From positions 186,001 through 250,000 of the IMG/VR virus record IMGVR_UViG_3300028840_008185: DNA of 64,000 nucleotides; one strand, written 5' to 3'. The notes under the pieces are model-generated. The model ran no database searches. It worked only from the letters and a program-made list of their open reading frames with translations, and was not told the DNA's origin. This document shows, one piece after another, positions 7,526-23,331 of this stretch (the stretch's first letter is position 1; every line of letters starts with the position of its first letter). Made by a program: the position numbers and the translations under genes.

Positions 7526-7577
7526 TGGTGAACCTTTGTGGACTCGAACCACATACTTCCAAATACAAGTAAGGTTC
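7526..7577 (-). ncRNA. 52-nt minimal tRNA-like RNA lacking an anticodon arm
   Basis: Perfect 7-bp acceptor GAACCTT/AAGGTTC plus A-CCA; hairpin ACTT-GTATTTGG-AAGT; canonical T arm TGTGG-TTCGAGT-CCACA. Confidence 0.8.
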
Positions 7578-7789: not shown

Positions 7790-7809
7790 AGGGGCCCCTA
7801 GGGGCCCCT
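7790..7809. repeat. 20-bp perfect palindrome, (AGGGGCCCCT)x2
   Basis: Read directly; lies just past the stop of 7818..8027. Confidence 0.9.
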
Positions 7810-7817
7810 CTTGCTAC

Positions 7818-8027
7818 TTACTTCATCTTCTCCTTGACTTGAGCCAACATCGAGTCCATGGCCAGCGTGTAGACGGCTAACTTCTCGCACATCGCATCCA
7901 CTTCGCTCTTTTGCTCCGATTGCTCTTGCTCTTGGTGCATCAGCCTCCACAACCGCCGCTCACTTGCGTCTCGAACATGATGGTAGCGTGGGGCTGACCT
8001 TCCGCCTCGTGGTCTACACATGGCCAT
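7818..8027 (-). CDS. hypothetical coiled-coil protein (MAMCRPRGG...)
   Basis: GGAGGT SD; start overlaps upstream stop. Confidence 0.65.
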   Translation of the reverse strand: MAMCRPRGGRSAPRYHHVRDASERRLWRLMHQEQEQSEQKSEVDAMCEKLAVYTLAMDSMLAQVKEKMK

Positions 8028-9748: not shown

Positions 9749-12442
9749 TTATAGATTATCCTCGTAGTAATGTAGCTCTCCTATCTCCTCTTCCGTATGA
9801 GGCTCTTTGGTTATATTCTCGTTGATTGTTTCGATTAAGATTCTTATAGCCGGGGCTAGGGATTTCAGTTCATTTAGGTCATATGTCTCAATATCTATCT
9901 GAGTCTGCGGGAAGCCCGCATATATGTCTTGCTTGGCGTATCGCTTTAGAGGTGCTGGGGTTTCTATAGGCTTTTGACAAATAATAAATACCTCCTTCTC
10001 GCGCCCTCTTGATTGGGCTCCGAAGGTCGCCTTGATTCCGATGTTCGCACTTACATCGGAATTCCTGTAGTTTGTGATGTCCCAGCCTTGGAACATCTCT
10101 TTGGGAAACAGTTCAGTTAAATCTGGATCATAGGGCTTCCCTATTGGGACGACGTTTGATGTATCTCCACCCCTTTGGTCCGTTAAATTCATACTCTCCG
10201 CAAAGCCTCCTATCGTAGTAATAATAGGAGCTATTTTCTCGACATCTTTGGGAAAATCGAAATGAAGCGTATAAGTATTCCTATCTATATCCACCTTGAG
10301 ACCTAGGTTAAAATCTCCTATCTGCGATGGCCATGAAAGATGTCCTGCGGGTAATCGGTCTTTTGTCGCATCTATAGAGAAGTATCCATTATTGAAATTA
10401 TTTTGCTTCGGGAAAGAGACCCAAGCCATGAAGTATGCTCCATATAATTCTCCCTCGCGCCCAGTTTTCTCCTGCTCTCTTCCCTCCATAGAGGTCCAAC
10501 CACCGAAAACTGTTATAGACAGTTCGGGAAAGAACTTTTCCAATATCTCTTTTGGCTGGCCATATAGCTTTGCCCGCTTAGATATAGAGAATGTTTGGCT
10601 TTCAAGCTTAATCGCTTGAGCTTTGGCCCCGATGTTCTTTATGACCTGAATAGGCTCCGTGAAGTTTCCACCCACGGGTATGTTATACTGTGATGTTTCA
10701 TCCTGGTTGAATAACTCAAAGAATATGTTGTATGAGACTGGCTTACCTTCGTGGTGGATGAGCATAATTTTAAGATAAATATTTAGTTTTTTACTTCCCG
10801 CTCGTATAACAGTATCTTCATACTTCAGAGTATCCCAACCCTTAAAGATTTCTGGTGGAAACACCTCTTTCATTTCTGGAGGCGCTGGGTCTTTGTCTCC
10901 CTCTTCCTTCTTTAGAGTGAACTCAGCAATCAAATCATGAATCTGTGGGAGTTGTTCTTCGAATTCACCTTTGCTCAGGTTTTCCACCTCAGCGCCGCGA
11001 TATTCATTTGTAAATCCCCAGCGCACTTCTACACCCTCTTTGCCGCTTGGATGAACTTCTTCTGGCCATCCCATAGCCCAGGAGATTTTATCTTGTTCTT
11101 TATCTACACGCAGAAAAACTTCTCCCTGGTGAAACCTCAGATAGGCTTCTATCTCATTGGGTTCATACTTAGTAACAAACCATTGCGGCTTATCACCTCG
11201 CATGGTGCCAAAAACATGGGCTGGGAAGTATTTTCTTAGGTCTACCTCCTGAGCCCGCTTAGATATAGGTAATGATTGATTTCCTATCAACTCTAGCTCT
11301 TCTTCTGGGTATTGCTGCTTTGCTTCTTCGGCAAGATCATTTCCGCTGTCGATTGCCTGTTTGATAGGCTCAATTAGTTTGTCGAACTCTCCCATAGTTT
11401 TTGCTATAACCATTTCGTTGAACACTGGGTCCATCTTCGGCATGTTTAGTTGGATGTGAACCCCGCCGTATGTTAGGCGAATATCCACTGAGTAGTAAGG
11501 TTCAGTTGGATTAGGCGTGAGCGGTGGTAAGTGAGCCTTTATAATGTCTACGTCATAGTTTTCTATTATGAAATTCTTGAATAAGTTCTTTGGGAATAGC
11601 TCCGTGAAGTTTATGTTTTGGACCGCTCCAGTAGGTCTTGGCTTCTGGTATTCTGTTATGCCCCTTTGCTTTAGACTCTTCAGTGTTTCTGCATCTACTC
11701 CAACACTTTCAATAATTTCAAGAATTTTGGGCAGCTTCTCCTTTATCTCCTCGTTTTCCAGCCATATTTTTAGAGGCTTTCCTATCAAGCCGGTATTGAA
11801 GTCTCCTAGCTCTGGATCCCATTTTAAATCCAGTGTCATTTGTTTTCTTCCGCCTTTAAAATGATGTAGTTCTAATCTTATCCTTGGCTCCCACTTTATT
11901 CCTGGAATATGCACGTAGGCTTCAAAGGCGTCTGTCTCCCACGAAGAGCCTCCGCCATATTTTAAAGCTTGAATGTTCCAACCGCCGAAATATCCTGGCG
12001 GAATGAAAGGGAAGTGTTTTCTTAATACCTCCGCTGCTTCGTGTCTCTCTTCCTCTTTCCAGCTTGATCTCTTGGAAATCCTAGGCGTTATTTCTTTAAT
12101 AGTTTCCTGATCTTTCTCGGGAAGCTTCTTGAAGAGCCTGTCTTTAATCACGAAATCTATGTTCTTTTTCGCATCGACAACTTTACCTTTATAATCATAA
12201 TCTTTCTCTAATTGAGACGCAGTTGGATCAAATATGTTTCCCTTCTTATCCTCCGCCCAGAAGTGTGCGGTGTCTTCCTTGTGCTTGCCTTTGCCTTTGT
12301 GTGGCGGCTTGCCTTTCATAAGTTTAAGTTCAGGGAACAGCAGAGACATGGCGGCAGCATAGAAGAAACAATTCCCATGATGCTTCGCCCTCACATTTTC
12401 CTTCATCCATTTCAGGATAGGCTGCCGCTTAGATAGTTTCAT
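9749..12442 (-). CDS. 897-aa modular (poly)protein: N-terminal Cys-His-Asp (transglutaminase/papain-like) domain plus three repeated two-domain cassettes separated by ISKR[AS]
   Basis: GNCF...HFW...DPTASQ; motifs at aa 3, 122, 393, 620; six FP..F.GW-type repeats. Confidence 0.85.
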   Translation of the reverse strand: MKLSKRQPILKWMKENVRAKHHGNCFFYAAAMSLLFPELKLMKGKPPHKGKGKHKEDTAHFWAEDKKGNIFDPTASQLEKDYDYKGKVVDAKKNIDFVIKDRLFKKLPEKDQETIKEITPRISKRSSWKEEERHEAAEVLRKHFPFIPPGYFGGWNIQALKYGGGSSWETDAFEAYVHIPGIKWEPRIRLELHHFKGGRKQMTLDLKWDPELGDFNTGLIGKPLKIWLENEEIKEKLPKILEIIESVGVDAETLKSLKQRGITEYQKPRPTGAVQNINFTELFPKNLFKNFIIENYDVDIIKAHLPPLTPNPTEPYYSVDIRLTYGGVHIQLNMPKMDPVFNEMVIAKTMGEFDKLIEPIKQAIDSGNDLAEEAKQQYPEEELELIGNQSLPISKRAQEVDLRKYFPAHVFGTMRGDKPQWFVTKYEPNEIEAYLRFHQGEVFLRVDKEQDKISWAMGWPEEVHPSGKEGVEVRWGFTNEYRGAEVENLSKGEFEEQLPQIHDLIAEFTLKKEEGDKDPAPPEMKEVFPPEIFKGWDTLKYEDTVIRAGSKKLNIYLKIMLIHHEGKPVSYNIFFELFNQDETSQYNIPVGGNFTEPIQVIKNIGAKAQAIKLESQTFSISKRAKLYGQPKEILEKFFPELSITVFGGWTSMEGREQEKTGREGELYGAYFMAWVSFPKQNNFNNGYFSIDATKDRLPAGHLSWPSQIGDFNLGLKVDIDRNTYTLHFDFPKDVEKIAPIITTIGGFAESMNLTDQRGGDTSNVVPIGKPYDPDLTELFPKEMFQGWDITNYRNSDVSANIGIKATFGAQSRGREKEVFIICQKPIETPAPLKRYAKQDIYAGFPQTQIDIETYDLNELKSLAPAIRILIETINENITKEPHTEEEIGELHYYEDNL

Positions 12443-12732
12443 TCCAGTTCCTCGCTTTTATCTTCCAGCTTGGCAAGTTTTGTTTCAATGTATCGCATAA
12501 CATTCTCTATGCGGGTTCTCGCCAGCACTGAAAAATCGTCATCTCCTGATAACTCTTCAAGAATATCACCAAGTTCGTAGGACACAAGCTTTTTCAGTTC
12601 TGTTAAAAGCCCTCTACGTTCCGCAATTCTTTGATACTTAGAGGAACGGTGAAGAAGATCATATCTTTCTTCGCTCTCCTGTAATTTTTGCAGCAAATCT
12701 TCTTCTTCTGCGGCACGCTTAGATAGTTTCAT
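12439..12732 (-). CDS. small helical protein starting MKLSKRAA
   Basis: ATGA overlaps on both sides; shared N-terminal motif. Confidence 0.85.
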   Translation of the reverse strand: MKLSKRAAEEEDLLQKLQESEERYDLLHRSSKYQRIAERRGLLTELKKLVSYELGDILEELSGDDDFSVLARTRIENVMRYIETKLAKLEDKSEELE

Positions 12733-14741
12733 CTCGCAACCTCTGTTAAAAACTTATTCACTGCATCTCTATATCTCTTCTCCCAGACGCCCATTGGTTT
12801 GGCCTTGAGTTCATTATAGCGACCAACGGCATCTTTCCGCTCAAGATCTGTCTTCTCATATTCCCAGATCAAACGCCGCTTATCTTCTTCTTCACTTGCT
12901 TTTTCTATTTCTTTACGCCTTAAATCCTGAGCATAATCCAGAGCCCCTATGTATTTAAGCAGTTGATTTATTTCTTCAAGCTCTTCGTCCATCTTGGCTC
13001 TCAGGCTCACAAAGAAATGATTTGGCCAAACCCTTGTGGACAATCCCACCTCGGGCATATCTGGCGCTTGTATGAAATATGGTTTGTTCTGCCCGCCGCT
13101 AACGTAATAGGGTGGAGCAGCCATAAAAGCTTTGAGAGCTTCATTTCTTGGGCGCTCATTTCCCCAACGTTCAGGAAACTTTTGATGAAATCTTCTTTTC
13201 CATGCATCAGCAACAGTCCCTATGTTAGAATGATACTCTATATCTCTTAGAGCATGCGGCAATCTGGTCTTCTCCAGTTGCTTCCACTTTTCCTCCACCA
13301 ATGTCTTTCTTTCTTCGGAGGTTGGAGCCCGTCTTATTACCTCATCCCATTGCTTTATATCTTCTGTTTTATAGCCATGAGGTCCATAGCCAGGAGTTTC
13401 TGTTGTTGGGAGCCCTGCTGGTCTGCTCCAGCGATCCTCTTCCGCCCAGTCTTTTTTCGGAAGCTTTCTCGGCAGCTTTTTGCCCCAGCTAATCAAGGTT
13501 TGGACTAGGTGGCGCATCTCGTGCTCGGTAGTTGATTTAAGCTTCTTCCTAAACTTCTCGTATTCATTTGGATCTTTTGGATGTAAAAACTTCTTGGGCA
13601 CAAAAATTCTAAGATTTCGTAGATGGTCATCCCACTCGCCTAGTGGATCTTCTGCTCTCTGTGGTTCCATGCTCACTATAATCTTTACAGGGACTAAGAC
13701 CTGAGGAAGATTGTATTTTTCCCAGCCAGCATAGTCTATAGGTATTGTTGTGTTTTCATAACCCACAAAGACATTTCCCTTCTCATACTTTTCCTCTGGC
13801 GTAGGCTTCTTTTCATATCCTTCATCATCATACCTAAGATCATCTAGCTTAGCGTTTTGAAGAGATTTGCGTCTCATTATTAGATAATCTGGAAGGTCTT
13901 CATCCCACAGAGGCTCTCCCTTCTCGAAAAATTTAGAGGTCTTGTCGGACAACATGTGCAACGCATCTTTGAGCGTCATTTTTGTTTCAAACTTAGGATA
14001 ATCCGCAAAGCCCCAAACCTTTTGAAAAGCTTTACTTTCTGCGTTGGGAATGTATACGTCTTCTATTGGGCCACTGACTTTGGAGACGCCTCTTGGAAGG
14101 GTCACATACAACGTTTTGTATTCATCTACCGCCCCAAGCAGTTCGGGATTCATTATAGGAATTTTGAAATCTTTAAACAATCCGCTGGTCAAGAAAAGCT
14201 CAACCTCTTCTTTAAGAGTCTTTGCGTTATAAATCTTTGGCAACAAATCGTCTATTTTATCTTGAATTTCATCGACTTGGTTCTCAACAGCCTTATATTG
14301 TTTCTGCGTTATTCTTGGTTTCATAATGTCGATGAGTGCCCAACGAGCGTAGTTCTTTTCAACCCACGCCCAAACCTTTTCGGTTTCAGGCGGCAGAGGT
14401 ATAACTGCCGCTTCCTTCTTCATTTTACCTCTGTGCGACAGGTCAATCAACGGCTTAATGTGAATTACCTGGACCTTATCTTTCGGGTCTAATTTCACGA
14501 AATCTTTCATTTTAGCCACTTGTTTGGGCACATGCTTATGTAAATCCTTGAACTTTGTGGTTATTATGGTATTAACCCTAACCTTAAAGCCCCAGTCTTT
14601 TCCTGAATAAGACTGAGCATCATACTCTCTTCCCTTTCTATACTTGCCCATCTCCTTTCCAATACGCACAGTTAGATTCTTCTTGCCCGAAAGCAATTTG
14701 TTCTTATACTGTGATGGGAAGGGCATTACATTCTTTTTCAT
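12729..14741 (-). CDS. 670-aa protein: N-terminal ASCH/PUA-like domain plus HExxH zincin-like region
   Basis: FPSQYKNKLLSGKKNLTVR (ASCH-like); HEMRH at 13509-13523 and a downstream RDIEYH. Confidence 0.75.
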   Translation of the reverse strand: MKKNVMPFPSQYKNKLLSGKKNLTVRIGKEMGKYRKGREYDAQSYSGKDWGFKVRVNTIITTKFKDLHKHVPKQVAKMKDFVKLDPKDKVQVIHIKPLIDLSHRGKMKKEAAVIPLPPETEKVWAWVEKNYARWALIDIMKPRITQKQYKAVENQVDEIQDKIDDLLPKIYNAKTLKEEVELFLTSGLFKDFKIPIMNPELLGAVDEYKTLYVTLPRGVSKVSGPIEDVYIPNAESKAFQKVWGFADYPKFETKMTLKDALHMLSDKTSKFFEKGEPLWDEDLPDYLIMRRKSLQNAKLDDLRYDDEGYEKKPTPEEKYEKGNVFVGYENTTIPIDYAGWEKYNLPQVLVPVKIIVSMEPQRAEDPLGEWDDHLRNLRIFVPKKFLHPKDPNEYEKFRKKLKSTTEHEMRHLVQTLISWGKKLPRKLPKKDWAEEDRWSRPAGLPTTETPGYGPHGYKTEDIKQWDEVIRRAPTSEERKTLVEEKWKQLEKTRLPHALRDIEYHSNIGTVADAWKRRFHQKFPERWGNERPRNEALKAFMAAPPYYVSGGQNKPYFIQAPDMPEVGLSTRVWPNHFFVSLRAKMDEELEEINQLLKYIGALDYAQDLRRKEIEKASEEEDKRRLIWEYEKTDLERKDAVGRYNELKAKPMGVWEKRYRDAVNKFLTEVAR

Positions 14742-14742
14742 A

Positions 14743-15180
14743 TCATTCCTCTGAGTAAGCTAGAACATTCACGGGGAGGTTACTAACATATTCCAACCAC
14801 TTATAGATTTTGCTCAGTAGCATTGGAAAATACTTCATACTCATCCTTGGAAGATCTACAACGTAGTATCTGTCTTTCTTGCCAGCAGGTTTGGCCATTT
14901 TTCCAAAATATACATCTCCAAGCTCGCTTGGCCATACCATCTTTAGTCTGAATGATTTCCCATCTCCTTCTAGCTCAAGAGTAGCAGATAGATATTCATC
15001 CTCTTTCGCGCCCGCAACTGGCCAGAAGGTTGTCTCCAGTGTTATGAATTCACGCTCGGCAGGCTTTCCCTCAGTGGGACCAAACCATTTGAATGGGAAG
15101 TTCTTTATCTTATCCGGAGTGAAATATCTGAATATGCTCCCCTTATCAGCCTCTTCGTGCTTCTTCCTGAATTCGCTCAT
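14743..15180 (-). CDS. hypothetical protein with WPSxLGD domain paralogous to polyprotein segments
   Basis: LKMVWPSELGDVYFG. Confidence 0.8.
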   Translation of the reverse strand: MSEFRKKHEEADKGSIFRYFTPDKIKNFPFKWFGPTEGKPAEREFITLETTFWPVAGAKEDEYLSATLELEGDGKSFRLKMVWPSELGDVYFGKMAKPAGKKDRYYVVDLPRMSMKYFPMLLSKIYKWLEYVSNLPVNVLAYSEE

Positions 15181-18100
15181 CTCGCGTCTCTCTTCTCGAA
15201 CTCATGCAAATCTATTAGTTGCTTTTCAGTCAAGCCTCTTTTCTGTTGCTCTTCGTAATCTTGGGGATACTCAAGAGGGAAAACCTCAGCTTCCTCTCCC
15301 TTTTCTTCCGGCGGCGTCACCTTCTCTGTTGGAAACTCAATCACCTTGGCGGCTCGTCTGGAAAGCTGAAACCCATCACTTATCTCTTCCAAATATTCTC
15401 CCGGCAGCGTGCCACTTTTAATTGTCACAAACGCATGAGGGGTGCCCTGAAATAGAAGGCGGGGGCTCGTGCGTTTGAATCCCTTGGCTTTACTAAGCTC
15501 TTCGAGAAGGGAGCCTTGCTCTACTTCGCGCTGGCTCCGTGGCTTTTCCTCTACAATACTAACACCTTCAATCAGTCCATCCGCTAGAGCACGGCTGTAA
15601 TCAACTGCATACAGCTTTCTGCGCTTTGCGAATGCTTGTTGTTCAGGATCATCTTGTGGTCCTATTGGCCGTAACAATAACGAAACCACACGAGAACCAC
15701 CAGGGCCTCGTAGCTTTTCAAGAGCTTCAATAATTTCTTCTGTAGTTAGAGATTCGGCTTCTTTTCCAAGCTCTTCTGCCGCCCTTCCACGATATTTTTC
15801 TAATACTTCAGGCATATGAGACAAACTAGCGGGAGTCTTCAAGCCCTCTTTTATTAGATCTACTCCTGAGGGTCCGTAGTGATATAGCATAGTGGGCACA
15901 GCGGCTCGTTTAGATATAGCAAAAGAACCCTCGGACTTCATCTTTTTTGATAGGGCGCCTATCTTGCTAATAACTGGCAACAATTTCCTCAAGACACCAT
16001 CAAGCTCGCTATAAGATCCTTCTTTAGCGAATATCATTGTGGGCCCGTCTTCTATGGCATCAAGCTCCATATCCCCAAGTTTAGATGGCCAGTGCAACTC
16101 TAAGCGGTAATCGCCTTCTCTTATGGGTGCGTCCGGTTCCAATACCTTGGAGCGCAGCTTTATGGTGAGTAAGAACCAGCCGTATGCGACCTTGGGCATA
16201 AATTCTTCCTCATAGTGCGTTGGAATATCTGGGAAGCTGGTGCTTAACTCAAGCGTGTATCGAGGGTAACCAGTCTCGGAGTAATCATCAGCCTGAACAT
16301 CCCAACCCTCTATTTTGCTTGGTGGAATTAGCAGCCTGAACTCTCTTTCGTAGACATCATCCTCACCCGCCCTTTTTGATAAAGGGATGCCACCTCCTCC
16401 TCCAGCAAACTTCTCCATCACCATTCTCTTAGCCACATCTTTCGTAAGCTCTTTGCCTTCCTCAGCCAACCCATCCTGAAGCTCAAGCAGATACTTTCCA
16501 ACCTGACCGATGATTGGCCCAGGTTTTACATCAAGGATTTCCATAATTTCTTTGCCGTTAAGTATGGGTTTCCTGGCCACGGGAATCTCTTTGGTCTGCT
16601 CGATGCGCTTTCTTAGTTCTGGGATGTAGTTGCTGGGAGGCATGTTCCCTAGAGCATCGGCCTCCGCAAGATCCAGCACATCATCAACCATGCCTTCGCC
16701 CACGTCGCGCACGAACTTCCTAAGAGCTTTTGGCGAGGCTTTTTCAAGGGAGTGTGGGCGCATGTGGTTCTCGACCATGGATTTCACGCGCTGTATAGTT
16801 TTTCCGTCAAACTTGAGTCTGCGCAAGATGGCCTCAGCAATTTCTGCGCCCGCTTTCTCATGGCCCAAGAACTGAATCTTGTCGCCTATGAACTCTTGGG
16901 TCTCAGGTTTGCCGATGTCGTGGAGTAGGGCAGCCAGCTGCCCGTGAATCGTAGGTGGGGCGTTCGAGAGGACTAATAGAGTGTGCTTATAGACATCTCC
17001 TTCCTGGTGGCTGCGCTTGTCGTGCTTGACACCAATGAGCCCATAGATTTCGGGAAGGACTAAGGGAAGGAGGTTGGTCGCTTTCATTATTTTAATGGCC
17101 TGGGCGGTTTTGCCAAGCTTCATTACTTTTGTGAGTTCTTCTTGTATGCGTTCCCAAGAGATTTTCTGTATCTCTTCGGCGTTTCTCCTGACTGATCTGA
17201 GCATAAACATAGGAATCTTCCAGTCATATTTACATTGGAAGCGAATAAGACGAAGCATGCGCAGTGGGTCATTAGAGAACATCGTGTCGGGATTCACAGC
17301 CGGGTGGCCTCTTAGAATGCCCTTTTCTATATCCTCTTTGCTTGTGCCCGTCAGGTCTTCTATTTCGCCCGATGTGAGGTCTCTGAGCAGCATGTTCACC
17401 GTGAAGTCTCTACGCTCGATGTCATCCTTGAGAGGCGCGTAAACCGTCTCACGCTGCCTTGAGGAGGGATCGGGGTAGTGTTCCTTCTGCGTGTCCGCAA
17501 TATCGATTTCAGCGCCTGTCGTAGCATATCGCTGGCCCTCATAAGTTATATCATCCTTGAAGGCGACGTGCCAGATTGGGTAGGCTGCTCCTAGCTGGCG
17601 AGGGGTTGAGGTCTGCTCGGGGAAACTGTCAGCTATAAACTTGCAGAGGGCTTCAGCCCCGCCACGCATTTCCACAACTATGTCGAGGTCTTTGGACTCC
17701 ATGCCCATCAGCTTGTCTCGCTCGTAGCCTCCTACGGAGAAGGCTTTACCGGCGAAAGGGGTGCCCGGTAGTATCCGGAGTAGAAGTCTTTGAACCTCCT
17801 CCTCCGCGAGCGCAGCTCGCTTTGACAGTTTGACATCACTGGCTGGCTGATCTGCTTTCGCACCGGCTCGTTGCTCCGCCCACCTTATTAGACCATCCAT
17901 GGATCTGGCTGCACTTTCAGCACTCATACCTATAACTGTGCCAGCCTCCTCGGGAACTTTGTATAGAAAGTCTTCTTCTGGATAGTTTCTACCCATACCG
18001 GCGAAGGCTCTATTATCCAAATCCATGGGGTCGCCGGATGGTCTTTCATTTTTTTCGTAGATCGCATATGGCGGCGGCTCAAATCCAGGCTCACTAACTT

Positions 18101-19691
18101 CACTAATTATCATAACTGCCTGCGCAAAATACTCACGCTCATCAATATACACCTGCTGCATATTGGCGTTAAGGAAGTTTATCAACTCAGCTTTTACAGC
18201 CGAATTTTTTATTTGTGGCCAGATGTTTGTAAGTCGGTCACTCACCAATTGGAACAACACAGAATCAGGATCGCCATCAGCAAAATCTTCCGTCAGGCCA
18301 ACTGCCGCATCATCCGCATGGTCAAGCTCTCTGAACCGCCCCAGCCCATGACCGAAAGCAGCCAGCAAATACCATACGGGGGCCTCTTCTTCTACTGGTT
18401 CAGGAGACTCCTCTTTTGGCACCTCAGGAGCCACCGGCTCCTCTGGCGGCGCTTCTCTCTTCTTATGCATCTCCCACATCTCTTCTTCTGGAATAGGCTT
18501 AAGCGGCGTGCCAGCGCCGGGAGGAAGCTTATAGCTCTTCCACTGACCTGGCTGCTGTGTTTCGTAAGGTTCAAACCACTTAATGGCTCGCTTCGAGATA
18601 GGAAAAGATTGAGAGGCAACCTTACCCTTCGTGGTGTAGGATGTTTCCAATCCGGGAACAAGGTATTGATTCTTGAGAGTTCCAGCTTCGTGGCCTACGA
18701 TCTTAGCTGTGTTCTCCAGAGCTTCTTTGAACTCTTCTTTGAGTTTCTTTTCCTTTTCTTTTTGCTCCTTTGGAAGACTTCCCTTTCTCACCTTCTTAAG
18801 CTCTTTGCGCATCTCTTCATTGGCATGAAAACCCCTAATATCTTTGGCGGTGATATCAAATGGCTTCAAATAGGCATTAACAGTATTGTCCGTAATGTAA
18901 TAATTATCTCCCTTGAAGATCGTATCATTATCTTTCTTGCCACTCACCATTTCCCTGAGAACGGGAATGATGCTTTTGTTAGTGATCTTCTTATCTTGTT
19001 CTACGCCAGATTTTCCGGTGTATTTAATCACGGCTGTTCCACCAGTAAATTTTATATGTTTCTTCAGCCAGGTGGTCACGCCGTAATGCTTCATATCCTC
19101 GGCAGAATATCTGTTCCCAACTCTCTCGTATGTATCGTCAATGAGAGCTACAGCCAGAGCGTTATATTTTGTCTTGATGTCGCTAGACTTGAGATCCTTG
19201 CCCACTTCCTTTCTAACTTTGGTAATATTTTTGGACAGCTTGTCCAACTTCTTGGCCTTCTTTTCGTCGCGCTCCTTGACATGCTTTTCGGTGTAAATAT
19301 ATGTAATGTTTCCACTTTCTTCTTTCTTTTTCTCGACGTATTCTGCGGCTCGTTTAGACAAAGGAATCCTCTGCGGAATGCCGCTAAGCTCTTGGAATTC
19401 TTCATAATCTACAAGGATTTCTGTATTGGCGGGAATGTCTCGACTAGCGGCTAAGGCATAGCCTTTCTTGGTGGAAATGGCCAAGGCATTGGGGTCTTTG
19501 GAATGATTGAGGTATTTTCCTATGTCCGTTCTGGAATAGGCAGAATCAGTATCTTTGGCCCCTTTCAACTTCTTCATGATGAGGCCAACTACATCACCCT
19601 TCTTAATTTTTTCTTTAGAAAACACGCCTTTGCCGTGAATCTGTGATTTCTTGATTTCTACGGGAAGATCACGCACCGATATTGCTGCCAT
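15177..19691 (-). CDS. 1504-aa multi-enzyme polyprotein (SET, topoisomerase IB, unknown, CCA-adding/HD, unknown, ART-like, tail)
   Basis: Uninterrupted ORF; six [IL]S[KR]RA motifs at the domain boundaries. Confidence 0.92.
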   Translation of the reverse strand: MAAISVRDLPVEIKKSQIHGKGVFSKEKIKKGDVVGLIMKKLKGAKDTDSAYSRTDIGKYLNHSKDPNALAISTKKGYALAASRDIPANTEILVDYEEFQELSGIPQRIPLSKRAAEYVEKKKEESGNITYIYTEKHVKERDEKKAKKLDKLSKNITKVRKEVGKDLKSSDIKTKYNALAVALIDDTYERVGNRYSAEDMKHYGVTTWLKKHIKFTGGTAVIKYTGKSGVEQDKKITNKSIIPVLREMVSGKKDNDTIFKGDNYYITDNTVNAYLKPFDITAKDIRGFHANEEMRKELKKVRKGSLPKEQKEKEKKLKEEFKEALENTAKIVGHEAGTLKNQYLVPGLETSYTTKGKVASQSFPISKRAIKWFEPYETQQPGQWKSYKLPPGAGTPLKPIPEEEMWEMHKKREAPPEEPVAPEVPKEESPEPVEEEAPVWYLLAAFGHGLGRFRELDHADDAAVGLTEDFADGDPDSVLFQLVSDRLTNIWPQIKNSAVKAELINFLNANMQQVYIDEREYFAQAVMIISEVSEPGFEPPPYAIYEKNERPSGDPMDLDNRAFAGMGRNYPEEDFLYKVPEEAGTVIGMSAESAARSMDGLIRWAEQRAGAKADQPASDVKLSKRAALAEEEVQRLLLRILPGTPFAGKAFSVGGYERDKLMGMESKDLDIVVEMRGGAEALCKFIADSFPEQTSTPRQLGAAYPIWHVAFKDDITYEGQRYATTGAEIDIADTQKEHYPDPSSRQRETVYAPLKDDIERRDFTVNMLLRDLTSGEIEDLTGTSKEDIEKGILRGHPAVNPDTMFSNDPLRMLRLIRFQCKYDWKIPMFMLRSVRRNAEEIQKISWERIQEELTKVMKLGKTAQAIKIMKATNLLPLVLPEIYGLIGVKHDKRSHQEGDVYKHTLLVLSNAPPTIHGQLAALLHDIGKPETQEFIGDKIQFLGHEKAGAEIAEAILRRLKFDGKTIQRVKSMVENHMRPHSLEKASPKALRKFVRDVGEGMVDDVLDLAEADALGNMPPSNYIPELRKRIEQTKEIPVARKPILNGKEIMEILDVKPGPIIGQVGKYLLELQDGLAEEGKELTKDVAKRMVMEKFAGGGGGIPLSKRAGEDDVYEREFRLLIPPSKIEGWDVQADDYSETGYPRYTLELSTSFPDIPTHYEEEFMPKVAYGWFLLTIKLRSKVLEPDAPIREGDYRLELHWPSKLGDMELDAIEDGPTMIFAKEGSYSELDGVLRKLLPVISKIGALSKKMKSEGSFAISKRAAVPTMLYHYGPSGVDLIKEGLKTPASLSHMPEVLEKYRGRAAEELGKEAESLTTEEIIEALEKLRGPGGSRVVSLLLRPIGPQDDPEQQAFAKRRKLYAVDYSRALADGLIEGVSIVEEKPRSQREVEQGSLLEELSKAKGFKRTSPRLLFQGTPHAFVTIKSGTLPGEYLEEISDGFQLSRRAAKVIEFPTEKVTPPEEKGEEAEVFPLEYPQDYEEQQKRGLTEKQLIDLHEFEKRDAR
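15366..15902 (-). other. probable ADP-ribosyltransferase-fold (Tpt1/KptA-like) domain (segment 6)
   Basis: LYHYGPSG...IKEGLKTP at the start and GTLPGEYLEEI at the end resemble YHGT...GL.P and IP.EYI patterns. Confidence 0.45.
16383..17813 (-). other. cca: class II tRNA nucleotidyltransferase (CCA-adding/poly(A) polymerase family) with HD domain (segment 4)
   Basis: VGGYERD...KDLDIVV, RRDFTVN, DPLRMLRLIRF, SWERIQEEL, LLHDIGKP. Confidence 0.92.
18600..19346 (-). other. DNA topoisomerase IB catalytic domain (segment 2)
   Basis: RVGN, GKSG, KDIRG, VGH, KNQYL catalytic residues as in bacterial/viral TopIB. Confidence 0.9.
19362..19691 (-). other. SET domain (polyprotein segment 1)
   Basis: SQIHGKGVF...YLNHSKDPN...RDIPANTEILVDY: GxG, NHS and ExxxDY SET motifs. 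Confidence 0.9.
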
Positions 19692-19733: not shown

Positions 19734-19964
19734 TTAGAGCCAGGTATGATAATCATGCGTATCAGCATCCCAAACCACATGAAAAATTCTGGCGCAGGCA
19801 GGACAGTGAGGGTGGAGGACAAAATCATCCTCTTCTGGGTAGTAGATCCAGAGGTATGAAAGGCAGGAGGGACAGTTTGTTTCAAGATGGTAATATCCCT
19901 CGGGTGTTGGCAGATCAAAAAGCGAACAAATGACAGATCTATCGCTAGCATTAAGTATCTTCAT
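19734..19964 (-). CDS. small zinc-finger protein (CPSC...CPAC), N-terminus MKILNA
   Basis: ATGA overlap; two CxxC. Confidence 0.8.
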   Translation of the reverse strand: MKILNASDRSVICSLFDLPTPEGYYHLETNCPSCLSYLWIYYPEEDDFVLHPHCPACARIFHVVWDADTHDYHTWL

Positions 19965-20317
19965 ATCGCACCCACCTCCGCAGCTATTTTTTCTAGCTTT
20001 TTAACAAACCAAGTGGTCATGTCCGTAAGCCACCTGTCGCTTTCGTGGAAATTGGCATTCCTCATTGCTTCTTTGCCATCTCGATTAATCCTAAAAGATG
20101 TTGCGGCTTGCCCATCATCTCCCGATGTTATGTCTATGTATGCATATATGTTCGCAAACGTCATATAGGAAGGTGGATAAACCCAGACAATTTCCATGCC
20201 TCCATTCCACTCGGACATTCTAACTGGAGCCAACTTACATCTATTAACTATGGGCAAAATGATTTCCTTAGCCCGCCCTATCTGTTTGCTAAGGGGAACT
20301 GAATTCAAAACTTTCAT
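19961..20317 (-). CDS. hypothetical protein, N-terminus MKVLNS
   Basis: Start reassigned to ATG 20317 (ATGA overlap). Confidence 0.8.
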   Translation of the reverse strand: MKVLNSVPLSKQIGRAKEIILPIVNRCKLAPVRMSEWNGGMEIVWVYPPSYMTFANIYAYIDITSGDDGQAATSFRINRDGKEAMRNANFHESDRWLTDMTTWFVKKLEKIAAEVGAI

Positions 20318-20616
20318 ACGGGGAACCACCTTTCCAGGAAGTCTATAAGTTCATCCTTGGCGTAATCTTTTGATATAAAATGAACAGCGCCCATCATGTT
20401 GTTGTCCATAATCCTCACGAACAATTCATTCTTAGTGGCACCCTGATCCTCGGCGTCATCACCGACCATCAAAACAACTTTACTAGGCCACCTAAAGGCA
20501 ATCCCACCTAACTTTTCTATAATCTTATCAGGCTGCTCAATACCTTCTTGTGTGCAAAACTCTTCCACAGCTTCTTTAGATCGTTCAAAAAAAGAAATAG
20601 AATTAACCAATATCAT
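20314..20616 (-). CDS. hypothetical protein, N-terminus MILVNS
   Basis: Start reassigned to ATG 20616. Confidence 0.7.
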   Translation of the reverse strand: MILVNSISFFERSKEAVEEFCTQEGIEQPDKIIEKLGGIAFRWPSKVVLMVGDDAEDQGATKNELFVRIMDNNMMGAVHFISKDYAKDELIDFLERWFPV

Positions 20617-21016
20617 TTTGGCCGAAATCTCCTGGTTTGGATTCGACACTGGCCAACCATCGTATAACATCAGCCGCGCCGTTTCTTATCGCTTGAACTA
20701 TCTCTTGCGTCATCGGTCTTCCTAGAAAACCATGAATCATCCACAAAATATTGCACTGAATAATCCATCGCTGGTCATACGTAAGATAAGCGGCATCGTA
20801 GTCGGAGATGGTCACGCCTACCTTTCGCTGCTCGAAATCGGCCTGAACTATCAACCTATTTATCATGTCATCTACACCCACTTTAGCTATGTTTCTACAT
20901 ATGGGCGGATCAGGAAGCCCGTAAAAGGGATACACTTCCCAGCCTTCCGGCGGAGATGTATGAACTTCTCTCGTCGGTAAAATTGATTCTTTAACAAACG
21001 CACCTGGGCGCATCAT
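20603..21016 (-). CDS. hypothetical protein (MMRPGAF...)
   Basis: Start just after upstream stop. Confidence 0.75.
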   Translation of the reverse strand: MMRPGAFVKESILPTREVHTSPPEGWEVYPFYGLPDPPICRNIAKVGVDDMINRLIVQADFEQRKVGVTISDYDAAYLTYDQRWIIQCNILWMIHGFLGRPMTQEIVQAIRNGAADVIRWLASVESKPGDFGQNDIG

Positions 21017-21017
21017 C

Positions 21018-21227
21018 TTAGGCATCTTTCCATCCTTTTGGGAGCTTGGGCTCTTCAATTTTGATAAGATCGTCATTATAGTCTTCTGGGTATTGAAGCC
21101 ACACCTTTTCTATTCTCTTGGATATGGCATCCAGATCCTGCTCACCAATATATCTGTCAAAACTTTTCCGGAAGACTTCACAAACTTTATCCAACAATCT
21201 TTCTTCCTCTGTGTTAAGTATTTTCAT
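21018..21227 (-). CDS. hypothetical protein, N-terminus MKILNT
   Basis: ATGA overlap. Confidence 0.75.
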   Translation of the reverse strand: MKILNTEEERLLDKVCEVFRKSFDRYIGEQDLDAISKRIEKVWLQYPEDYNDDLIKIEEPKLPKGWKDA

Positions 21228-21769
21228 TTTTTACCCACTTCGAATGTTCTAGTAGTAATAGCCTTACTATCCTCTAAAGTAGTAAATGGAATTTCCTCTT
21301 CCCACTCTTCTTGAGCGCCAACATTAAAAGCTCTCGGGCTTCGCACTTCAATGTCTGGTTCCTCTTCCTGGAATCCTTCACCCTGGAACCAAGGGAGCTT
21401 TGTCAATAGCTCAACAAGCCCTGGGTCATTAAGAGCATCGCCTTCCTTGTGCATGGGCATACCTTCCTTCCACTCATACTTGTCGGGAATTACTTCCTTA
21501 TCCCTGATTACTTCTGCGGCTGCCTCTTGAATCTCTCCAAGGTTCTTAATAGTCGTGTCCAGAGTTTCTTTGGGCAGAATATTACCATGAAGCTTTGCCC
21601 ACAGCTTCACCTTCTTTATTTTCTCCACCGCATCCTTCTTCACCGTAGCAGAGAACTTCACAAATTCTTTCCACTCACCTTTGGGGTCCAAAGGATCAAA
21701 CTCTCCACACTTAGCTATTAGCTTAACGATCTCAACTGCTTTCTCTAATTCCATTTTCTTAATCTCCAT
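21224..21769 (-). CDS. acidic hypothetical protein (181 aa)
   Basis: ORF packing. Confidence 0.8.
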   Translation of the reverse strand: MEIKKMELEKAVEIVKLIAKCGEFDPLDPKGEWKEFVKFSATVKKDAVEKIKKVKLWAKLHGNILPKETLDTTIKNLGEIQEAAAEVIRDKEVIPDKYEWKEGMPMHKEGDALNDPGLVELLTKLPWFQGEGFQEEEPDIEVRSPRAFNVGAQEEWEEEIPFTTLEDSKAITTRTFEVGKK

Positions 21770-21971
21770 ATTTTATTTTTCTTACCGCCAGCGTCCATTT
21801 AGATTTCACTGGCAAGAACTTCTTGTAATCTGTTGTGCTCTTTATCTCATAGACTTGTTTGTATTCTTTGGTTGAAGGGGTCCAGTTGTAAATCTTTCCA
21901 ACCGGGAACGCATCTCCATTTAGATTTATTCTCACACCCCAGCCAATCTCACTGGTATTTAGTAGTTTCAT
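21759..21971 (-). CDS. hypothetical protein, N-terminus MKLLNT
   Basis: ORF packing. Confidence 0.7.
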   Translation of the reverse strand: MKLLNTSEIGWGVRINLNGDAFPVGKIYNWTPSTKEYKQVYEIKSTTDYKKFLPVKSKWTLAVRKIKYGD

Positions 21972-21972
21972 T

Positions 21973-22380
21973 TCAACCCCTTTTGACTATTCTCCAAATT
22001 ATTTCCACATCAGCCAATCTCAACATTTCTCGTTTATTTATCAGGCCATGTTTAGGATCCAAGAACTGCCTCCTTTTGCTATCCCAAACAACGTAGTGCC
22101 CAGAAAGATTGGGCTGCCTCCACTGGACAGCTACGAGTGCAGCGCCCTTCTGCGGGAGCCTGCATATCTCGTTGTAGTCGTAACCGAGAGAATCCAAAAT
22201 GTCTAGAACTCTGTGGGGATACAATCCACCACGAGAGCGTTTAAGCTCAGGAAATTGTTCAGTAACTTCCTCGTAGAGATGCTTGGTAAGCATGGCTATG
22301 CAAGCTATACCGCAGTCCGTCTTCCGTCTTTGCTCTACAAATTCAATTTGCCTTGGCCTGTGAGACGGAATTTTACTCAA
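21973..22380 (-). CDS. stand-alone C39-like cysteine peptidase
   Basis: EQRRKTDCGIAC...GHYVVWD...LDP. Confidence 0.85.
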   Translation of the reverse strand: MSKIPSHRPRQIEFVEQRRKTDCGIACIAMLTKHLYEEVTEQFPELKRSRGGLYPHRVLDILDSLGYDYNEICRLPQKGAALVAVQWRQPNLSGHYVVWDSKRRQFLDPKHGLINKREMLRLADVEIIWRIVKRG

Positions 22381-22383
22381 TGA

Positions 22384-22626
22384 TTATTCACCTCGAAGCT
22401 TTTCGTCTAACTCCTTTAATATAAGACCTTTTTCCTGGTCAGTCAACCCCTCGTCTTCAACTTTCATGAGTTTTGAGAGATCATTGGTCTGGTGCTCTAT
22501 CTGCTTCATAAGCCTTTGCAGGGCTCTTTTTCTCTCAGGAGAGGAATTAGCATATGGAGATTTCTGTAGCTTCTCTATAGCCGTTCGCAAAACTTCGGGA
22601 AGCTTCTCAAATAGAATGTTGATCAT
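22384..22626 (-). CDS. small helical hypothetical protein
   Basis: ORF packing. Confidence 0.7.
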   Translation of the reverse strand: MINILFEKLPEVLRTAIEKLQKSPYANSSPERKRALQRLMKQIEHQTNDLSKLMKVEDEGLTDQEKGLILKELDEKLRGE

Positions 22627-23035
22627 TTTTTACACCTATGATTTTATACACGAGCCCATTCTCTGTCGAACATACATTCTTGACAAACCCTCCATCGTTG
22701 CGTGCTTTTTCCAGAACAACCTCCACGAGCTTAACCGACTCCTTGCTTAAGCTATTTGTTTCCATAAAGGCGGTTCGTTGACTGCACACATACAGAGTTA
22801 AAGCGCCGCCTGTCACCATATCTTTATGGACGCGCAAAAGCGGGCAAACCTTAAATCTATCAACTTCTTCAAGCTCACAGAAAGACATTAGCCCTAGTTT
22901 GTAGCCGATCCTTGCGCTTTTGATGTGCTGAAATGTTCCTAGGGAATAGCCCAAAAACAGCATGAATAGCAGCACAAGAGTGCATACAATTATTTTTCCT
23001 ATATTGTTCTTTATCTTTCTCAAAAACCCTATCAT
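22607..23035 (-). CDS. membrane-anchored hypothetical protein
   Basis: Basic N-terminus then hydrophobic helix IIVCTLVLLFMLFLGYSLG. Confidence 0.75.
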   Translation of the reverse strand: MIGFLRKIKNNIGKIIVCTLVLLFMLFLGYSLGTFQHIKSARIGYKLGLMSFCELEEVDRFKVCPLLRVHKDMVTGGALTLYVCSQRTAFMETNSLSKESVKLVEVVLEKARNDGGFVKNVCSTENGLVYKIIGVKNDQHSI

Positions 23036-23331
23036 CTTTGTCCCTTTTTAAGCTCAGTCTTAATGCCATTCACATCGCCTTCTTTAAGCATGCGAATAAA
23101 GTGAACCAGATAATCAATGTCGTTTAAATCGTCTGGGTCAAACAAATCGATGTTAATACGCAGCACCTCTTTCGCATCAATGAGAAAGAGCACAGATTTA
23201 AGCTCGCGGGCGACCTTTACTTCCCAACACGGACTCCTGTAATCCTCCTCGCTATCAAAATCAAAAAATTCGCCGGGATCTGCCTTGTCATCGAGAATTT
23301 CCCCAAGTTCTTTGCTGTTAATCACCTTCAT
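23032..23331 (-). CDS. acidic hypothetical protein, N-terminus MKVINS
   Basis: GAGG SD; ATGA overlap. Confidence 0.8.
   Translation of the reverse strand: MKVINSKELGEILDDKADPGEFFDFDSEEDYRSPCWEVKVARELKSVLFLIDAKEVLRINIDLFDPDDLNDIDYLVHFIRMLKEGDVNGIKTELKKGQR

What the first reader, a model, noticed from the sequence alone, without database searches (positions are those of the whole stretch)
15177..19691. Multi-enzyme polyprotein punctuated by a conserved [IL]-S-[KR]-R-A motif at domain boundaries
Seen: the 1504-aa ORF contains LSKRA (aa 111; 19347-19361), ISKRA (365; 18585-18599), LSKRA (622; 17814-17828), LSKRA (1104; 16368-16382), ISKRA (1259; 15903-15917) and LSRRA (1443; 15351-15365), with varied codons. 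These sites bracket a SET domain, a TopIB catalytic domain, an unknown acidic domain, a CCA-adding/HD enzyme, a WPSxLGD domain, an ART-like domain and a short tail. Established: these enzymes are normally separate proteins, and prohead proteases of T4 and phiKZ process internal head proteins at short motifs. Inference: this is a polyprotein cut into independent enzymes, probably loaded into the capsid and injected with the DNA as a ready-made toolkit.
Basis: partly seen in the sequence, partly recalled or inferred. Interest (0 to 1): 0.93.

Follow-up and report, generated by a model that had tools for sequence, protein, structure and literature searches.

The report
Motif-delimited enzyme polyprotein of huge phage
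A 452-kb uncultured phage strings several unrelated enzymes into one 1504-residue protein, and a short motif marks every junction and recurs in neighbouring genes and related phages, so it looks like a cutting or addressing signal for protein cargo delivered with the phage DNA.

Summary
The 1504-aa ORF carries six [IL]S[KR]RA motifs, against 0.008 expected by chance. All six lie outside Pfam domains. The two that were modelled fall in pLDDT<50 linkers either side of a confidently folded TopIB.

SET, TopIB and the CCA-adding/HD enzyme are confirmed. The "ART-like" call is not.

The system is larger than reported. Three of the four downstream genes carry the motif or a decayed copy of it. Modules of all four occur inside the TopIB polyproteins of relatives, most starting at or just after a motif.

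About 115 related multi-domain TopIB proteins from huge-phage contigs fall into two mutually exclusive classes. One uses LSKRA (48 observed, 1.2 expected). The other uses RVAAR[YWH] (81 observed, 0.76 expected) at the homologous position.

In most relatives the gene sits between the portal and head-maturation protease genes, which supports capsid loading.

Cleavage is not shown and the protease is not identified. Candidates are:
- a C39 cysteine peptidase found only near LSKRA-type loci;
- a conserved HExxH module in the cluster;
- the prohead protease.

Portal, protease and capsid proteins lack the motif.

This is a new variant of the "polyvalent protein" class (Iyer et al. 2017), with a delimiter code I did not find in the papers I searched.

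The parts
15177..19691 (-). Polyvalent polyprotein gene, 1504 aa, seven modules
19362..19691 (-). Module 1 (aa 1-110): SET-domain methyltransferase
   Evidence: Pfam SET scores 36.5 bits against a cutoff of 22.4. Foldseek hits SETD8 at E about 5e-4. The NHS motif and the C-terminal Tyr motif are visible.
19347..19361 (-). Motif 1, LSKRA (aa 111-115)
   Evidence: lies in the pLDDT<50 segment 108-114
18600..19361 (-). Module 2 (aa 111-364): type IB topoisomerase
   Evidence: Pfam E=2e-27. AF2 pLDDT is above 90 over about 125-355. Foldseek matches variola TopIB 2h7f at E=9e-14. R190, K227, R286, H334 and Y343 are invariant in 46 sequences.
18585..18599 (-). Motif 2, ISKRA (aa 365-369)
   Evidence: lies in the pLDDT<50 segment 362-401
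17829..18599 (-). Module 3 (aa 365-621): acidic, Pro/Glu-rich, unknown function
   Evidence: No Pfam hit. No relatives among the fetched proteins. It is absent from P0002, where TopIB joins CCA directly at a motif.
17814..17828 (-). Motif 3, LSKRA (aa 622-626)
16383..17828 (-). Module 4 (aa 622-1103): class II CCA-adding enzyme with HD domain
   Evidence: Pfam PolyA_pol, PolyA_pol_RNAbd and HD. PHROG tRNA nucleotidyltransferase at E=1.5e-52. In P0002, P0003 and P0004 the module starts exactly at a motif.
16368..16382 (-). Motif 4, LSKRA (aa 1104-1108)
15918..16382 (-). Module 5 (aa 1104-1258): WPSxLGD domain, unknown function
   Evidence: Iterated HMM places the domain at 1109-1252. Paralogues are in g145 and g897 and in P0003, P0004 and P0022.
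15903..15917 (-). Motif 5, ISKRA (aa 1259-1263)
15366..15917 (-). Module 6 (aa 1259-1442): unknown; the 'ART-like' call is not verified
   Evidence: No Pfam hit and no significant PDB sequence hit. Homologous modules in P0007 (488-671) and P0009 (261-444) start at a motif and end before the next one, at 742 and 452.
15351..15365 (-). Motif 6, LSRRA (aa 1443-1447)
15180..15365 (-). Module 7 (aa 1443-1504): short acidic tail
14743..15180 (-). g145: stand-alone WPSxLGD-domain protein; its start overlaps the polyprotein stop by 4 nt
   Evidence: a homologous module lies inside P0022
12729..14741 (-). g670: N-terminal module (aa 1-100), decayed motif LSHRG (aa 101-105, 14427-14441), then a zincin-like module with HEMRH (aa 407-411, 13509-13523)
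   Evidence: HExxH..Q plus a distal Glu are invariant in 12 sequences. The modules occur inside P0021, P0010, P0025 and an L047 protein. No Pfam hit. The fold search was inconclusive.
12439..12732 (-). g97: 97-aa acidic protein beginning MKLSKRA (motif at 12712-12726); ATGA overlap with g670
9749..12442 (-). g897: starts MKLSKRQ. It has an N-terminal Cys..His..Asp-Pro module (aa 1-121), then WPSxLGD-containing modules delimited by ISKRS (12065-12079), ISKRA (11252-11266) and ISKRA (10571-10585).
21973..22380 (-). C39-family cysteine peptidase (135 aa), 2.3 kb upstream; candidate processing enzyme
   Evidence: Pfam Peptidase_C39 scores 28.9 bits against a cutoff of 22. The Cys/His/Asp motifs are conserved in relatives. 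The gene occurs only near LSKRA-type loci.

Best explanation
The ORF is a phage 'polyvalent' cargo polyprotein. Independent enzymes (SET methyltransferase, TopIB, CCA-adding/HD enzyme) and at least four uncharacterised modules are strung together.

With the four genes downstream it forms one operon-like set of interchangeable modules.

The [F/L]-P-[L/I]-S-[K/R]-R-A motif lies in flexible linkers or short N-terminal leaders and precedes most of the modules, though not the first (SET) module or g145. It is a lineage-specific recognition element read by a trans-acting phage factor.

The most likely mechanism is as follows.
1. The motif acts as an address tag, and a maturation protease cleaves at or next to it. 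The T4 capsid-targeting sequence, which the prohead protease removes, works this way.
2. The chain is thereby resolved into separate enzymes.
3. The enzymes are carried in the capsid and delivered with the DNA.

Shown here: the motif statistics, linker location, module shuffling at the motif, the two exclusive motif classes at homologous positions, and the head-module context in relatives.

Inferred: cleavage itself, the cut position, the protease, packaging, and injection.
For: Motif statistics:
- Six copies against 0.008 expected, with varied codons.
- 89 distinct LSKRA contexts give F at -2 and P at -1, and a variable downstream side.

Linker location:
- 0 of 49 motifs lie inside Pfam domains in 13 proteins.
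- AF2 with a 46-sequence alignment puts motifs 1 and 2 in pLDDT<50 coil next to a TopIB with pLDDT above 90.

Module shuffling:
- The CCA module starts at a motif at positions 622, 364, 765 and 28 in four proteins.
- Module 6 starts at a motif in P0007 and P0009.
- Modules of g145, g670 and g897 lie inside relatives' polyproteins.

Two motif classes:
- LSKRA is seen 48 times against 1.2 expected, and RVAAR[YWH] 81 times against 0.76 expected.
- No protein has both.
- Both sit at the same position in front of TopIB.

N-terminal copies:
- The motif lies 1-11 residues after the start codon of stand-alone genes.

Genomic context:
- The usual order is TerL, portal, TopIB polyvalent gene, head-maturation protease, major head protein.
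- LSKRA-type L006 has this order and L032 has the protease-containing ORF downstream.

Candidate proteases:
- A C39 peptidase lies within 10 kb upstream in 11 of 18 LSKRA-type loci and in 0 of 141 others.
- An HExxH module is conserved in clusters of both classes.

Precedents:
- Polyvalent proteins were proposed to be packaged and processed (PMC5512222).
- SPN3US head proteins lose N-terminal propeptides of 20-254 residues at a short motif, and T4 propeptides target proteins to the prohead core (PMC10052503).
Against: - There is no proteomic or biochemical evidence of cleavage; all relatives are uncultured.
- Portal, prohead protease, major head protein, TerL and two other conserved head-module families lack both motifs. 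The motif is therefore not a general head-maturation site.
- No candidate protease is universal. The C39 gene is missing within 10 kb of L006, L032 and L164. The zincin-like module was not detected in several LSKRA loci. Known C39 enzymes cut after Gly-Gly, which these sites lack.
- The zincin-like model is of low confidence and has no significant fold match.
- In this phage the cluster is not next to recognisable head genes, and the nearest structural genes are tail-like, more than 11 kb away.
- The link between C39 and LSKRA may only reflect shared ancestry. I could not build the tree needed to test this.
Confidence: 0.55

Rival explanations
1. The motif is an uncleaved docking or address tag. 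It binds a capsid-interior, scaffold or portal component, as encapsulin cargo-loading peptides do. Repeats arise because each shuffled module brings its own tag, and the polyprotein is packaged and ejected whole, as N4 vRNAP is.
For: - The motif sits at the extreme N-terminus of stand-alone genes, where there is nothing to cut off.
- Head structural proteins lack it, so it is cargo-specific.
- No universal protease partner was found.
- The f1 family in the head module carries a conserved variant just before a conserved C-terminal domain.
- N4 vRNAP is reported to be packaged unprocessed (PMC5512222).
Against: - A single tag per polypeptide would suffice, yet up to six are kept under selection in one chain.
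- The enzymes have different substrates (chromatin-like proteins, DNA, tRNA), which favours separation.
- Peptidase modules are conserved in the clusters.
Confidence: 0.2
2. The product is a cytoplasmic polyprotein that is never packaged. The operon is translated in the infected cell and cut at the motifs by the C39 or zincin-like peptidase. This gives equimolar enzymes, in the manner of RNA-virus polyproteins.
For: - In this phage the cluster lies among small genes and nucleotide-metabolism genes rather than next to head genes.
- A dedicated peptidase gene lies 2.3 kb upstream on the same strand.
Against: - In most relatives, and in LSKRA-type L006 and L032, the gene lies in or beside the head module: between portal and head-maturation protease in L122 and L006, and upstream of the protease ORF in L032.
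- Bacterial operons already allow co-expression without fusion.
- N-terminal leader motifs on separate genes would serve no purpose.
Confidence: 0.15
3. The motif is a passive linker remnant. Modules descend from genes that shared an N-terminal sequence, and the motif is carried along through gene fusion and recombination, possibly helped by nearby homing endonucleases, without any present function.
For: - Stand-alone genes start with the motif, and adjacent genes overlap by ATGA, so a one-base change would fuse them.
- HNH and GIY-YIG endonuclease genes lie beside the polyvalent genes in L032 and L164.
- A decayed copy (LSHRG) exists in g670.
Against: - S, R and A are invariant by construction of the search pattern; the informative points are that K is kept in 78 of 89 distinct contexts and that the unconstrained upstream positions show F at -2 and P at -1, while flanks and codons diverge.
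- Unrelated folds carry the motif.
- A second clade keeps a different motif at the same position, and the two never mix. This indicates purifying selection by a co-evolving reader.
Confidence: 0.05

Closest known systems
Polyvalent proteins of phages and conjugative elements (Iyer, Burroughs, Anand, de Souza, Aravind 2017; PMC5512222)
   Same: Both have many unrelated enzymatic or effector domains in one polypeptide of a phage. Both show extensive domain shuffling and a context of virion genes in relatives. Delivery with the DNA and proteolytic release of the domains are predicted for both.
   Different: That paper's text does not discuss TopIB, SET or CCA-adding domains or any linker motif. 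It attributes processing to an in-chain MPTase. Here no Pfam MPTase is detected. The junctions carry a conserved clade-specific motif, and the candidate peptidases are a separate C39 gene and a novel HExxH module.
T4 internal proteins and Alt: N-terminal capsid-targeting sequence removed by prohead protease gp21 at L/I-x-E
   Same: A short N-terminal leader on cargo proteins serves both for targeting and as the cleavage site. The cargo includes host-modifying enzymes injected with the DNA. This rests on established knowledge, and PMC10052503 refers to it.
   Different: The motif here is basic (S-K/R-R-A) and has no Glu. It is repeated inside one chain. It is absent from the major head and portal proteins of relatives, whereas gp21 also cuts the major structural proteins.
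phiKZ / 201phi2-1 / SPN3US giant-phage head maturation (gp175 / gp245; cleavage after S/A/G-x-E or A-x-E)
   Same: These are large phages whose heads carry many internal and ejection proteins processed at a short motif, losing propeptides of 20-254 residues (PMC10052503, PMC5694885).
   Different: Their cargo is encoded as separate proteins. Their motif is shared with the portal and capsid proteins. The motif chemistry is different.
Phage P1 Dar system and N4 virion RNA polymerase
   Same: Both are large multi-domain proteins packaged in the head and injected. DarA and DdrB are proteolytically processed (PMC5512222).
   Different: No repeated delimiter motif is described for them, and their enzyme content differs.
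Viral polyproteins of RNA viruses (for example 3C-protease sites); virion-packaged TopIB and poly(A) polymerase of poxviruses; packaged vSET of chlorella viruses
   Same: In concept, one translation product is cut at short repeated sites into enzymes, and the same enzyme classes are carried in virions. This comparison rests on my own knowledge.
   Different: These are unrelated viruses and proteases. This is an analogy only and implies no homology of the system.

Membership tests
Polyvalent proteins (Iyer et al. 2017) | Two to 15 unrelated enzymatic or effector domains in one polypeptide of a phage or conjugative element | tested here: met
   SET, TopIB and CCA/HD plus four further modules. 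The window is a phage with sigma factor, RNR, PhoH, DnaB and tail genes.
Polyvalent proteins (Iyer et al. 2017) | Mosaic, rapidly shuffled architectures among relatives | tested here: met
   115 TopIB proteins have differing partner domains, and modules are relocated between proteins.
Polyvalent proteins (Iyer et al. 2017) | MPTase (zincin-like) processing domain; frequent in the class but not obligatory | tested here: inconclusive
   No Pfam MPTase hit. A conserved HExxH..E module is present in g670 and relatives. The model is weak and Foldseek gives E>1.
Polyvalent proteins (Iyer et al. 2017) | Encoded among virion (late) genes | tested here: inconclusive
   Met in relatives, where the gene lies between the portal and head-maturation protease genes. 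Not seen within 74 kb in this phage.
Type IB topoisomerase | Pfam Topoisom_I above the gathering score, the TopIB fold, and the catalytic R-K-R-H-Y pentad | tested here: met
   96.4 bits against a cutoff of 23.7. 2h7f matches at E=9e-14. R190, K227, R286, H334 and Y343 are invariant, and their spacing matches the vaccinia pentad as I recall it.
SET-domain methyltransferase | SET fold with the NHS motif and the C-terminal Tyr motif | tested here: met
   36.5 bits against a cutoff of 22.4. SETD8 matches at E about 5e-4. The motifs are visible. The model confidence for the first 60 residues is low.
Class II CCA-adding enzyme with HD domain | PolyA_pol head, RNA-binding part and HD domain | tested here: met
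   (PHROG tRNA nucleotidyltransferase at E=1.5e-52)
ADP-ribosyltransferase (module 6) | Recognisable ART fold or motifs | tested here: not met
   No Pfam hit at E<=10. No significant PDB sequence hit.
T4 / phiKZ-type prohead-protease substrates | Cleavage motif ending in Glu, shared with the major capsid and portal proteins | tested here: not met
   The motif has no Glu. Portal, protease and major head proteins of relatives lack both motif types.
Peptidase C39 (gene 21973..22380) | Pfam above the gathering score and a Cys/His/Asp triad | tested here: met
   28.9 bits against a cutoff of 22. The conserved residues are seen.
Peptidase C39 (gene 21973..22380) | Substrates cut after a double-glycine leader | tested here: not met
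   LSKRA sites lack Gly-Gly directly before the motif. Only site 4 has a Gly run two residues upstream.
Actual proteolytic processing and packaging | Neo-termini at the motifs; presence of the modules in virions | not testable with these tools
   All relatives are uncultured.

The most novel reading that the evidence does not exclude
Huge phages use a portable, lineage-specific peptide 'zip code' (LSKRA in one clade, RVAARY in others). It both addresses arbitrary enzymes to the capsid interior and marks where they are cut apart. Any module that acquires the tag becomes injectable cargo, which would explain the combinatorial TopIB-centred polyproteins. The reader of the code would be a dedicated peptidase (C39-like or the new HExxH family) and not the classical prohead protease.
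Probability: 0.3. Interest if true: 0.85.

Novelty: new variant of a known kind. Interest (0 to 1): 0.72.

Why it matters
If the motif is a cleavage or address code, it gives a sequence rule for predicting the injected proteome of uncultured huge phages from sequence alone.

It would also explain how these phages assemble and exchange "toolkits" of host-takeover enzymes. Here the toolkit holds a DNA relaxase, a lysine methyltransferase and a tRNA-repair enzyme, which are classes that poxviruses and chlorella viruses also carry in their virions.

The rule defines about 100 testable substrates and three candidate proteases, two of which (the HExxH module and the g897 N-terminal module) have no Pfam family.

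It also suggests a simple tag for loading foreign proteins into phage capsids.

The finding extends the polyvalent-protein concept with a processing signal that I did not find described in the papers I searched.

Tried and rejected
- **Chance or low complexity:** rejected.
- **DNA-level repeat or recombination site:** rejected, because codons differ at every position.
- **Internal translation starts:** rejected, because no Met or start codon precedes the internal motifs.
- **Signal or Tat peptide:** rejected, because no hydrophobic stretch follows the motif.
- **Cultured relatives:**
  - megablast against INPHARED found nothing.
  - tblastn found only CCA enzymes, one unannotated 485-kb phage and PaBG TopI.
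  - The LR745208 TopIB is a 528-aa protein without the motif.
  - No relatives were found in 185,579 reference genomes.
- **Head genes of this phage:** PHROGs, Pfam, NCBIfam and family HMMs found none in the window or the extra 10 kb. The genome is about 452 kb, too large to walk with the look-up cap.
- **Zincin-like module:** there was no PDB sequence hit, the AF2 mean pLDDT was 60, and Foldseek gave E>1. The top weak hits were selecase and collagenase.
- **g897 N-terminal module as a peptidase:** only a Cys..His..Asp-Pro pattern is shared with the C39-like proteins, with no PDB or Pfam support.
- **Module 6 as ART:** no support.
- **C39 near P0025:** not found.
- **TopIB tree:** I wanted to test whether LSKRA-type proteins form one clade.
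- **Generalised R-motif regex:** it also hits a conserved internal segment of the major head protein, which I take as unrelated.


Full report
**1. The observation**

The minus-strand ORF 15177..19691 is intact and encodes 1504 residues. JGI called the same gene on the source contig.

A regular-expression scan reproduces all six motifs at the stated coordinates: LSKRA 111, ISKRA 365, LSKRA 622, LSKRA 1104, ISKRA 1259 and LSRRA 1443. Each motif position uses several synonymous codons, so conservation is at the protein level.

With this protein's composition, 0.008 copies are expected (Poisson P for six or more is about 3e-16). In 20,000 shuffles the maximum was two.

**2. The domains**

| Module | Residues | Assignment | Evidence |
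|---|---|---|---|
| 1 | 20-96 (Pfam) | SET | 36.5 bits; SETD8 at E about 5e-4 |
| 2 | 139-340 (Pfam) | TopIB | E=2e-27; pLDDT>90 over about 125-355; variola TopIB 2h7f at E=9e-14 and Deinococcus TopIB |
| 4 | 651-1017 (Pfam) | CCA-adding enzyme with HD | PolyA_pol, RNA-binding part and HD; PHROG tRNA nucleotidyltransferase at E=1.5e-52 |
| 3, 5, 7 | 365-621, 1104-1258, 1443-1504 | unknown | no family hit |
| 6 | 1259-1442 | unknown; "ART-like" not supported | no family hit; no significant PDB sequence hit |

The TopIB model used a 46-sequence alignment. R190, K227, R286, H334 and Y343 are invariant in it, with the spacing of the poxvirus catalytic pentad as I recall it.

**3. Motifs lie in linkers**

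In the model of aa 1-420, the only low-confidence stretches next to TopIB are 108-114, which holds motif 1, and 362-401, which holds motif 2.

I compared motif positions with Pfam stretches in this protein and 12 motif-bearing relatives. None of 49 motifs lies inside a domain, and random placement would give this with P about 9e-7.

**4. The system is larger than the ORF**

- The four genes downstream are tightly packed, with 4-nt start/stop overlaps at three of the four junctions; g145 and g670 are separated by one base.
- g97 (12439..12732) begins MKLSKRA.
- g897 (9749..12442) begins MKLSKRQ and has ISKRS at aa 122 and ISKRA at aa 393 and 620.
- g670 has a decayed LSHRG exactly where homology to other proteins changes partner.
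- A roughly 120-residue WPSxLGD domain recurs in module 5, in g145 and twice in g897. Where a motif is present, the domain follows it by 5-27 residues; g145 has no motif.
- No convincing copy occurs in a called gene elsewhere in the window or in the next 10 kb.

**5. The phage**

The window belongs to an uncultured phage of about 452.6 kb. Near-identical contigs of 452,619 and 452,599 bp occur in two samples. The window encodes a sigma factor, ribonucleotide reductase, PhoH, DnaB, DnaC, tail-like proteins and an endolysin.

**6. Relatives**

A protein search returned 115 large TopIB-containing multi-domain proteins, many from contigs of more than 100 kb and up to 461 kb. Their partner domains vary widely: SET, 2H phosphoesterase, PolyA_pol, NUDIX, GNAT, RNA ligase, ADP-ribosyl exotoxin-like, PRTase and several polyvalent-protein-associated domains.

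Fourteen of them carry two to six LSKRA-type motifs. In 89 distinct contexts the consensus is F(-2) P(-1) [L/I] S [K/R] R A, with a variable downstream side.

Module boundaries coincide with the motif:
- The CCA module begins at the motif at residue 622 here, 364 in P0002, 765 in P0003 and 28 in P0004.
- Module 6 begins at a motif in P0007 and P0009 and ends before the next one.
- Modules of g897, g670 and g145 lie inside the TopIB polyproteins of P0003, P0004, P0010, P0021, P0022 and P0025.

The operon and the polyproteins of relatives therefore draw on one pool of modules, fused or split in different ways.

**7. A second, exclusive motif**

Most other relatives lack LSKRA and instead carry R-[VIL]-[AL]-A-[RKQA]-[YWHF]. 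It is seen 81 times against 0.76 expected, and LSKRA 48 times against 1.2 expected. No protein has both.

In front of TopIB the two motifs occupy the same position: S-K-R-A-x-x-Y in one class against S-R-V-A-A-R-Y in the other.

Both types also occur 1-11 residues after the start codon of stand-alone genes or first modules, and occasionally near C-termini.

Two exclusive variants at homologous positions, each repeated within its own genome, are what one expects of a recognition element that co-evolves with a trans-acting reader.

**8. Genomic context**

I fetched 159 loci from viral and metagenome collections. Neighbour families were clustered and annotated.

- The typical order is large terminase, portal, TopIB polyvalent gene, a 216-aa family (f1), head-maturation protease, two further families, then the major head protein.
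- The protease lies downstream in 87 loci and the portal upstream in 59; many loci are too short to show both.
- LSKRA-type L006 has the portal fragment, polyvalent genes and then a protease-containing ORF, and L032 has the protease-containing ORF downstream of its polyvalent genes.
- This is the position held by minor head or cargo proteins in many phages, and it is the best evidence here for capsid loading.
- Portal, protease, major head protein, terminase and two further conserved families do not carry either motif.
- The f1 family has a conserved R-V-A-x-A-[FY]-[VIL]-K-K just before a conserved C-terminal domain.

**9. Candidate readers**

*C39 peptidase.*
- Gene 21973..22380 passes the Pfam gathering score for Peptidase_C39 and keeps the Cys, His and Asp motifs.
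- Homologues lie within 10 kb upstream in 11 of 18 LSKRA-type loci, representing seven distinct phages. They lie in none of 38 RVAARY-type or 103 untyped loci.
- The family is small: 72 clusters among 1.84 billion representatives, nearly all stand-alone proteins of about 100-220 residues.
- It is absent near L006, L032 and L164.
- Known C39 enzymes cut after Gly-Gly.
- The association may reflect common descent.

*HExxH module.*
- g670 aa 330-560 belongs to a family with invariant HExxH..Q and a distal Glu. It is found as a module in clusters of both motif classes.
- There is no Pfam hit.
- The structure model is weak, and only non-significant zincin hits lead the fold search.

*g897 N-terminal module.* It shares a Cys..His..Asp-Pro pattern with the C39-like proteins. 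This is suggestive only.

*Prohead protease.* It is adjacent in most relatives. Its usual substrates there lack the motif.

**10. Interpretation**

The protein is a member of the polyvalent-protein class (PMC5512222), which was proposed to be packaged, injected and proteolytically resolved.

What appears new relative to that paper and to the jumbo-phage survey (PMC7824862) is the following:
- the TopIB-centred architecture with SET and CCA-adding enzymes;
- the short delimiter motif with clade-specific variants;
- the candidate peptidases.

The N-terminal copies argue that the motif is more than a separator. The closest functional analogue is the T4 capsid-targeting sequence, which is removed by the prohead protease. 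SPN3US head proteins likewise lose N-terminal propeptides at a short motif (PMC10052503).

I rate the explanations as follows:
- address tag plus cleavage site: 0.55;
- uncleaved docking tag: 0.2;
- cytoplasmic processing without packaging: 0.15;
- passive remnant: 0.05.

**11. Limits**

- All evidence is comparative.
- The cut position, the protease, packaging and injection are inferred.
- The head module of this particular phage was not found.
- A phylogenetic control for the C39 association could not be computed.

Noticed in passing
window 19734-23331 (-): Five small consecutive genes upstream of the polyprotein begin MK[ILV][LI]N[ST] (for example MKLLNT, MKILNT, MKVLNS, MKILNA, MKVINS), and a sixth begins MILVNS. 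They may be a paralogous family or share an N-terminal signal.
   Followed up: no
window 1-8000: This stretch has 54-56% G+C against about 44% elsewhere. It is filled with small ORFs on the minus strand and has no tRNAs. Its composition is distinct from the rest of the phage.
   Followed up: no
window 15180-19691: Third-position G+C differs strongly between modules: 0.58 in the CCA module and 0.35 in module 6. This fits a mosaic origin of the modules.
   Followed up: partly
window 26291-29553 (-): The phage encodes a methionine aminopeptidase (Peptidase_M24), a thymidylate kinase, an amidase endolysin with a PG-binding domain, and ThyX.
   Followed up: no
window 33300-35119 (-): A sulfotransferase and a Kelch-repeat protein lie among tail-fibre-like genes with Big_5, BNR and Laminin_G_3 domains.
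   Followed up: no
window 9749-16382; P0003, P0004, P0022: A roughly 120-residue domain with a W-P-S-x-L-G-D signature and no Pfam family recurs at least four times in the cluster and in relatives. Apart from g145, each copy follows a motif by 5-27 residues.
   Followed up: partly
L011-L161, about 2-4 kb downstream of the TopIB gene: The f1 family (about 216 aa) lies between the polyvalent gene and the head-maturation protease. It carries a conserved R-V-A-x-A-[FY]-[VIL]-K-K followed by a conserved C-terminal domain. It may be another substrate or partner of the same reader.
   Followed up: partly
L047:5033-5821: The C39-like gene is directly followed by a 138-aa ORF that matches only the middle of a major-head-protein profile (PHROG 2522, E=4e-12).
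   Followed up: partly
L032:8539-9987 and 14013-14870; L164:6503-7156 and 13123-13794: HNH and GIY-YIG homing-endonuclease genes flank the polyvalent genes. They could drive module exchange.
   Followed up: no
P0019 aa 1325-1336; L103:12495-14093: Tandem motifs lie a few residues apart: LSKRSHLISKRA, and MRLSKRDFYLSKRA at an N-terminus.
   Followed up: no
window 19650-19691; L006:9648-9986: SET-first proteins start M-x-x-I-S-V-R-D-L-P without a canonical motif. An L006 gene starts with the same S-I-R-D-L-P leader followed by ISKRA. ISVRD may be a degenerate or variant tag.
   Followed up: no
L002:10604-11005 and 18409-18753: A RadC-like gene and an ankyrin-repeat gene lie downstream of the window in the 452-kb genome.
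   Followed up: no
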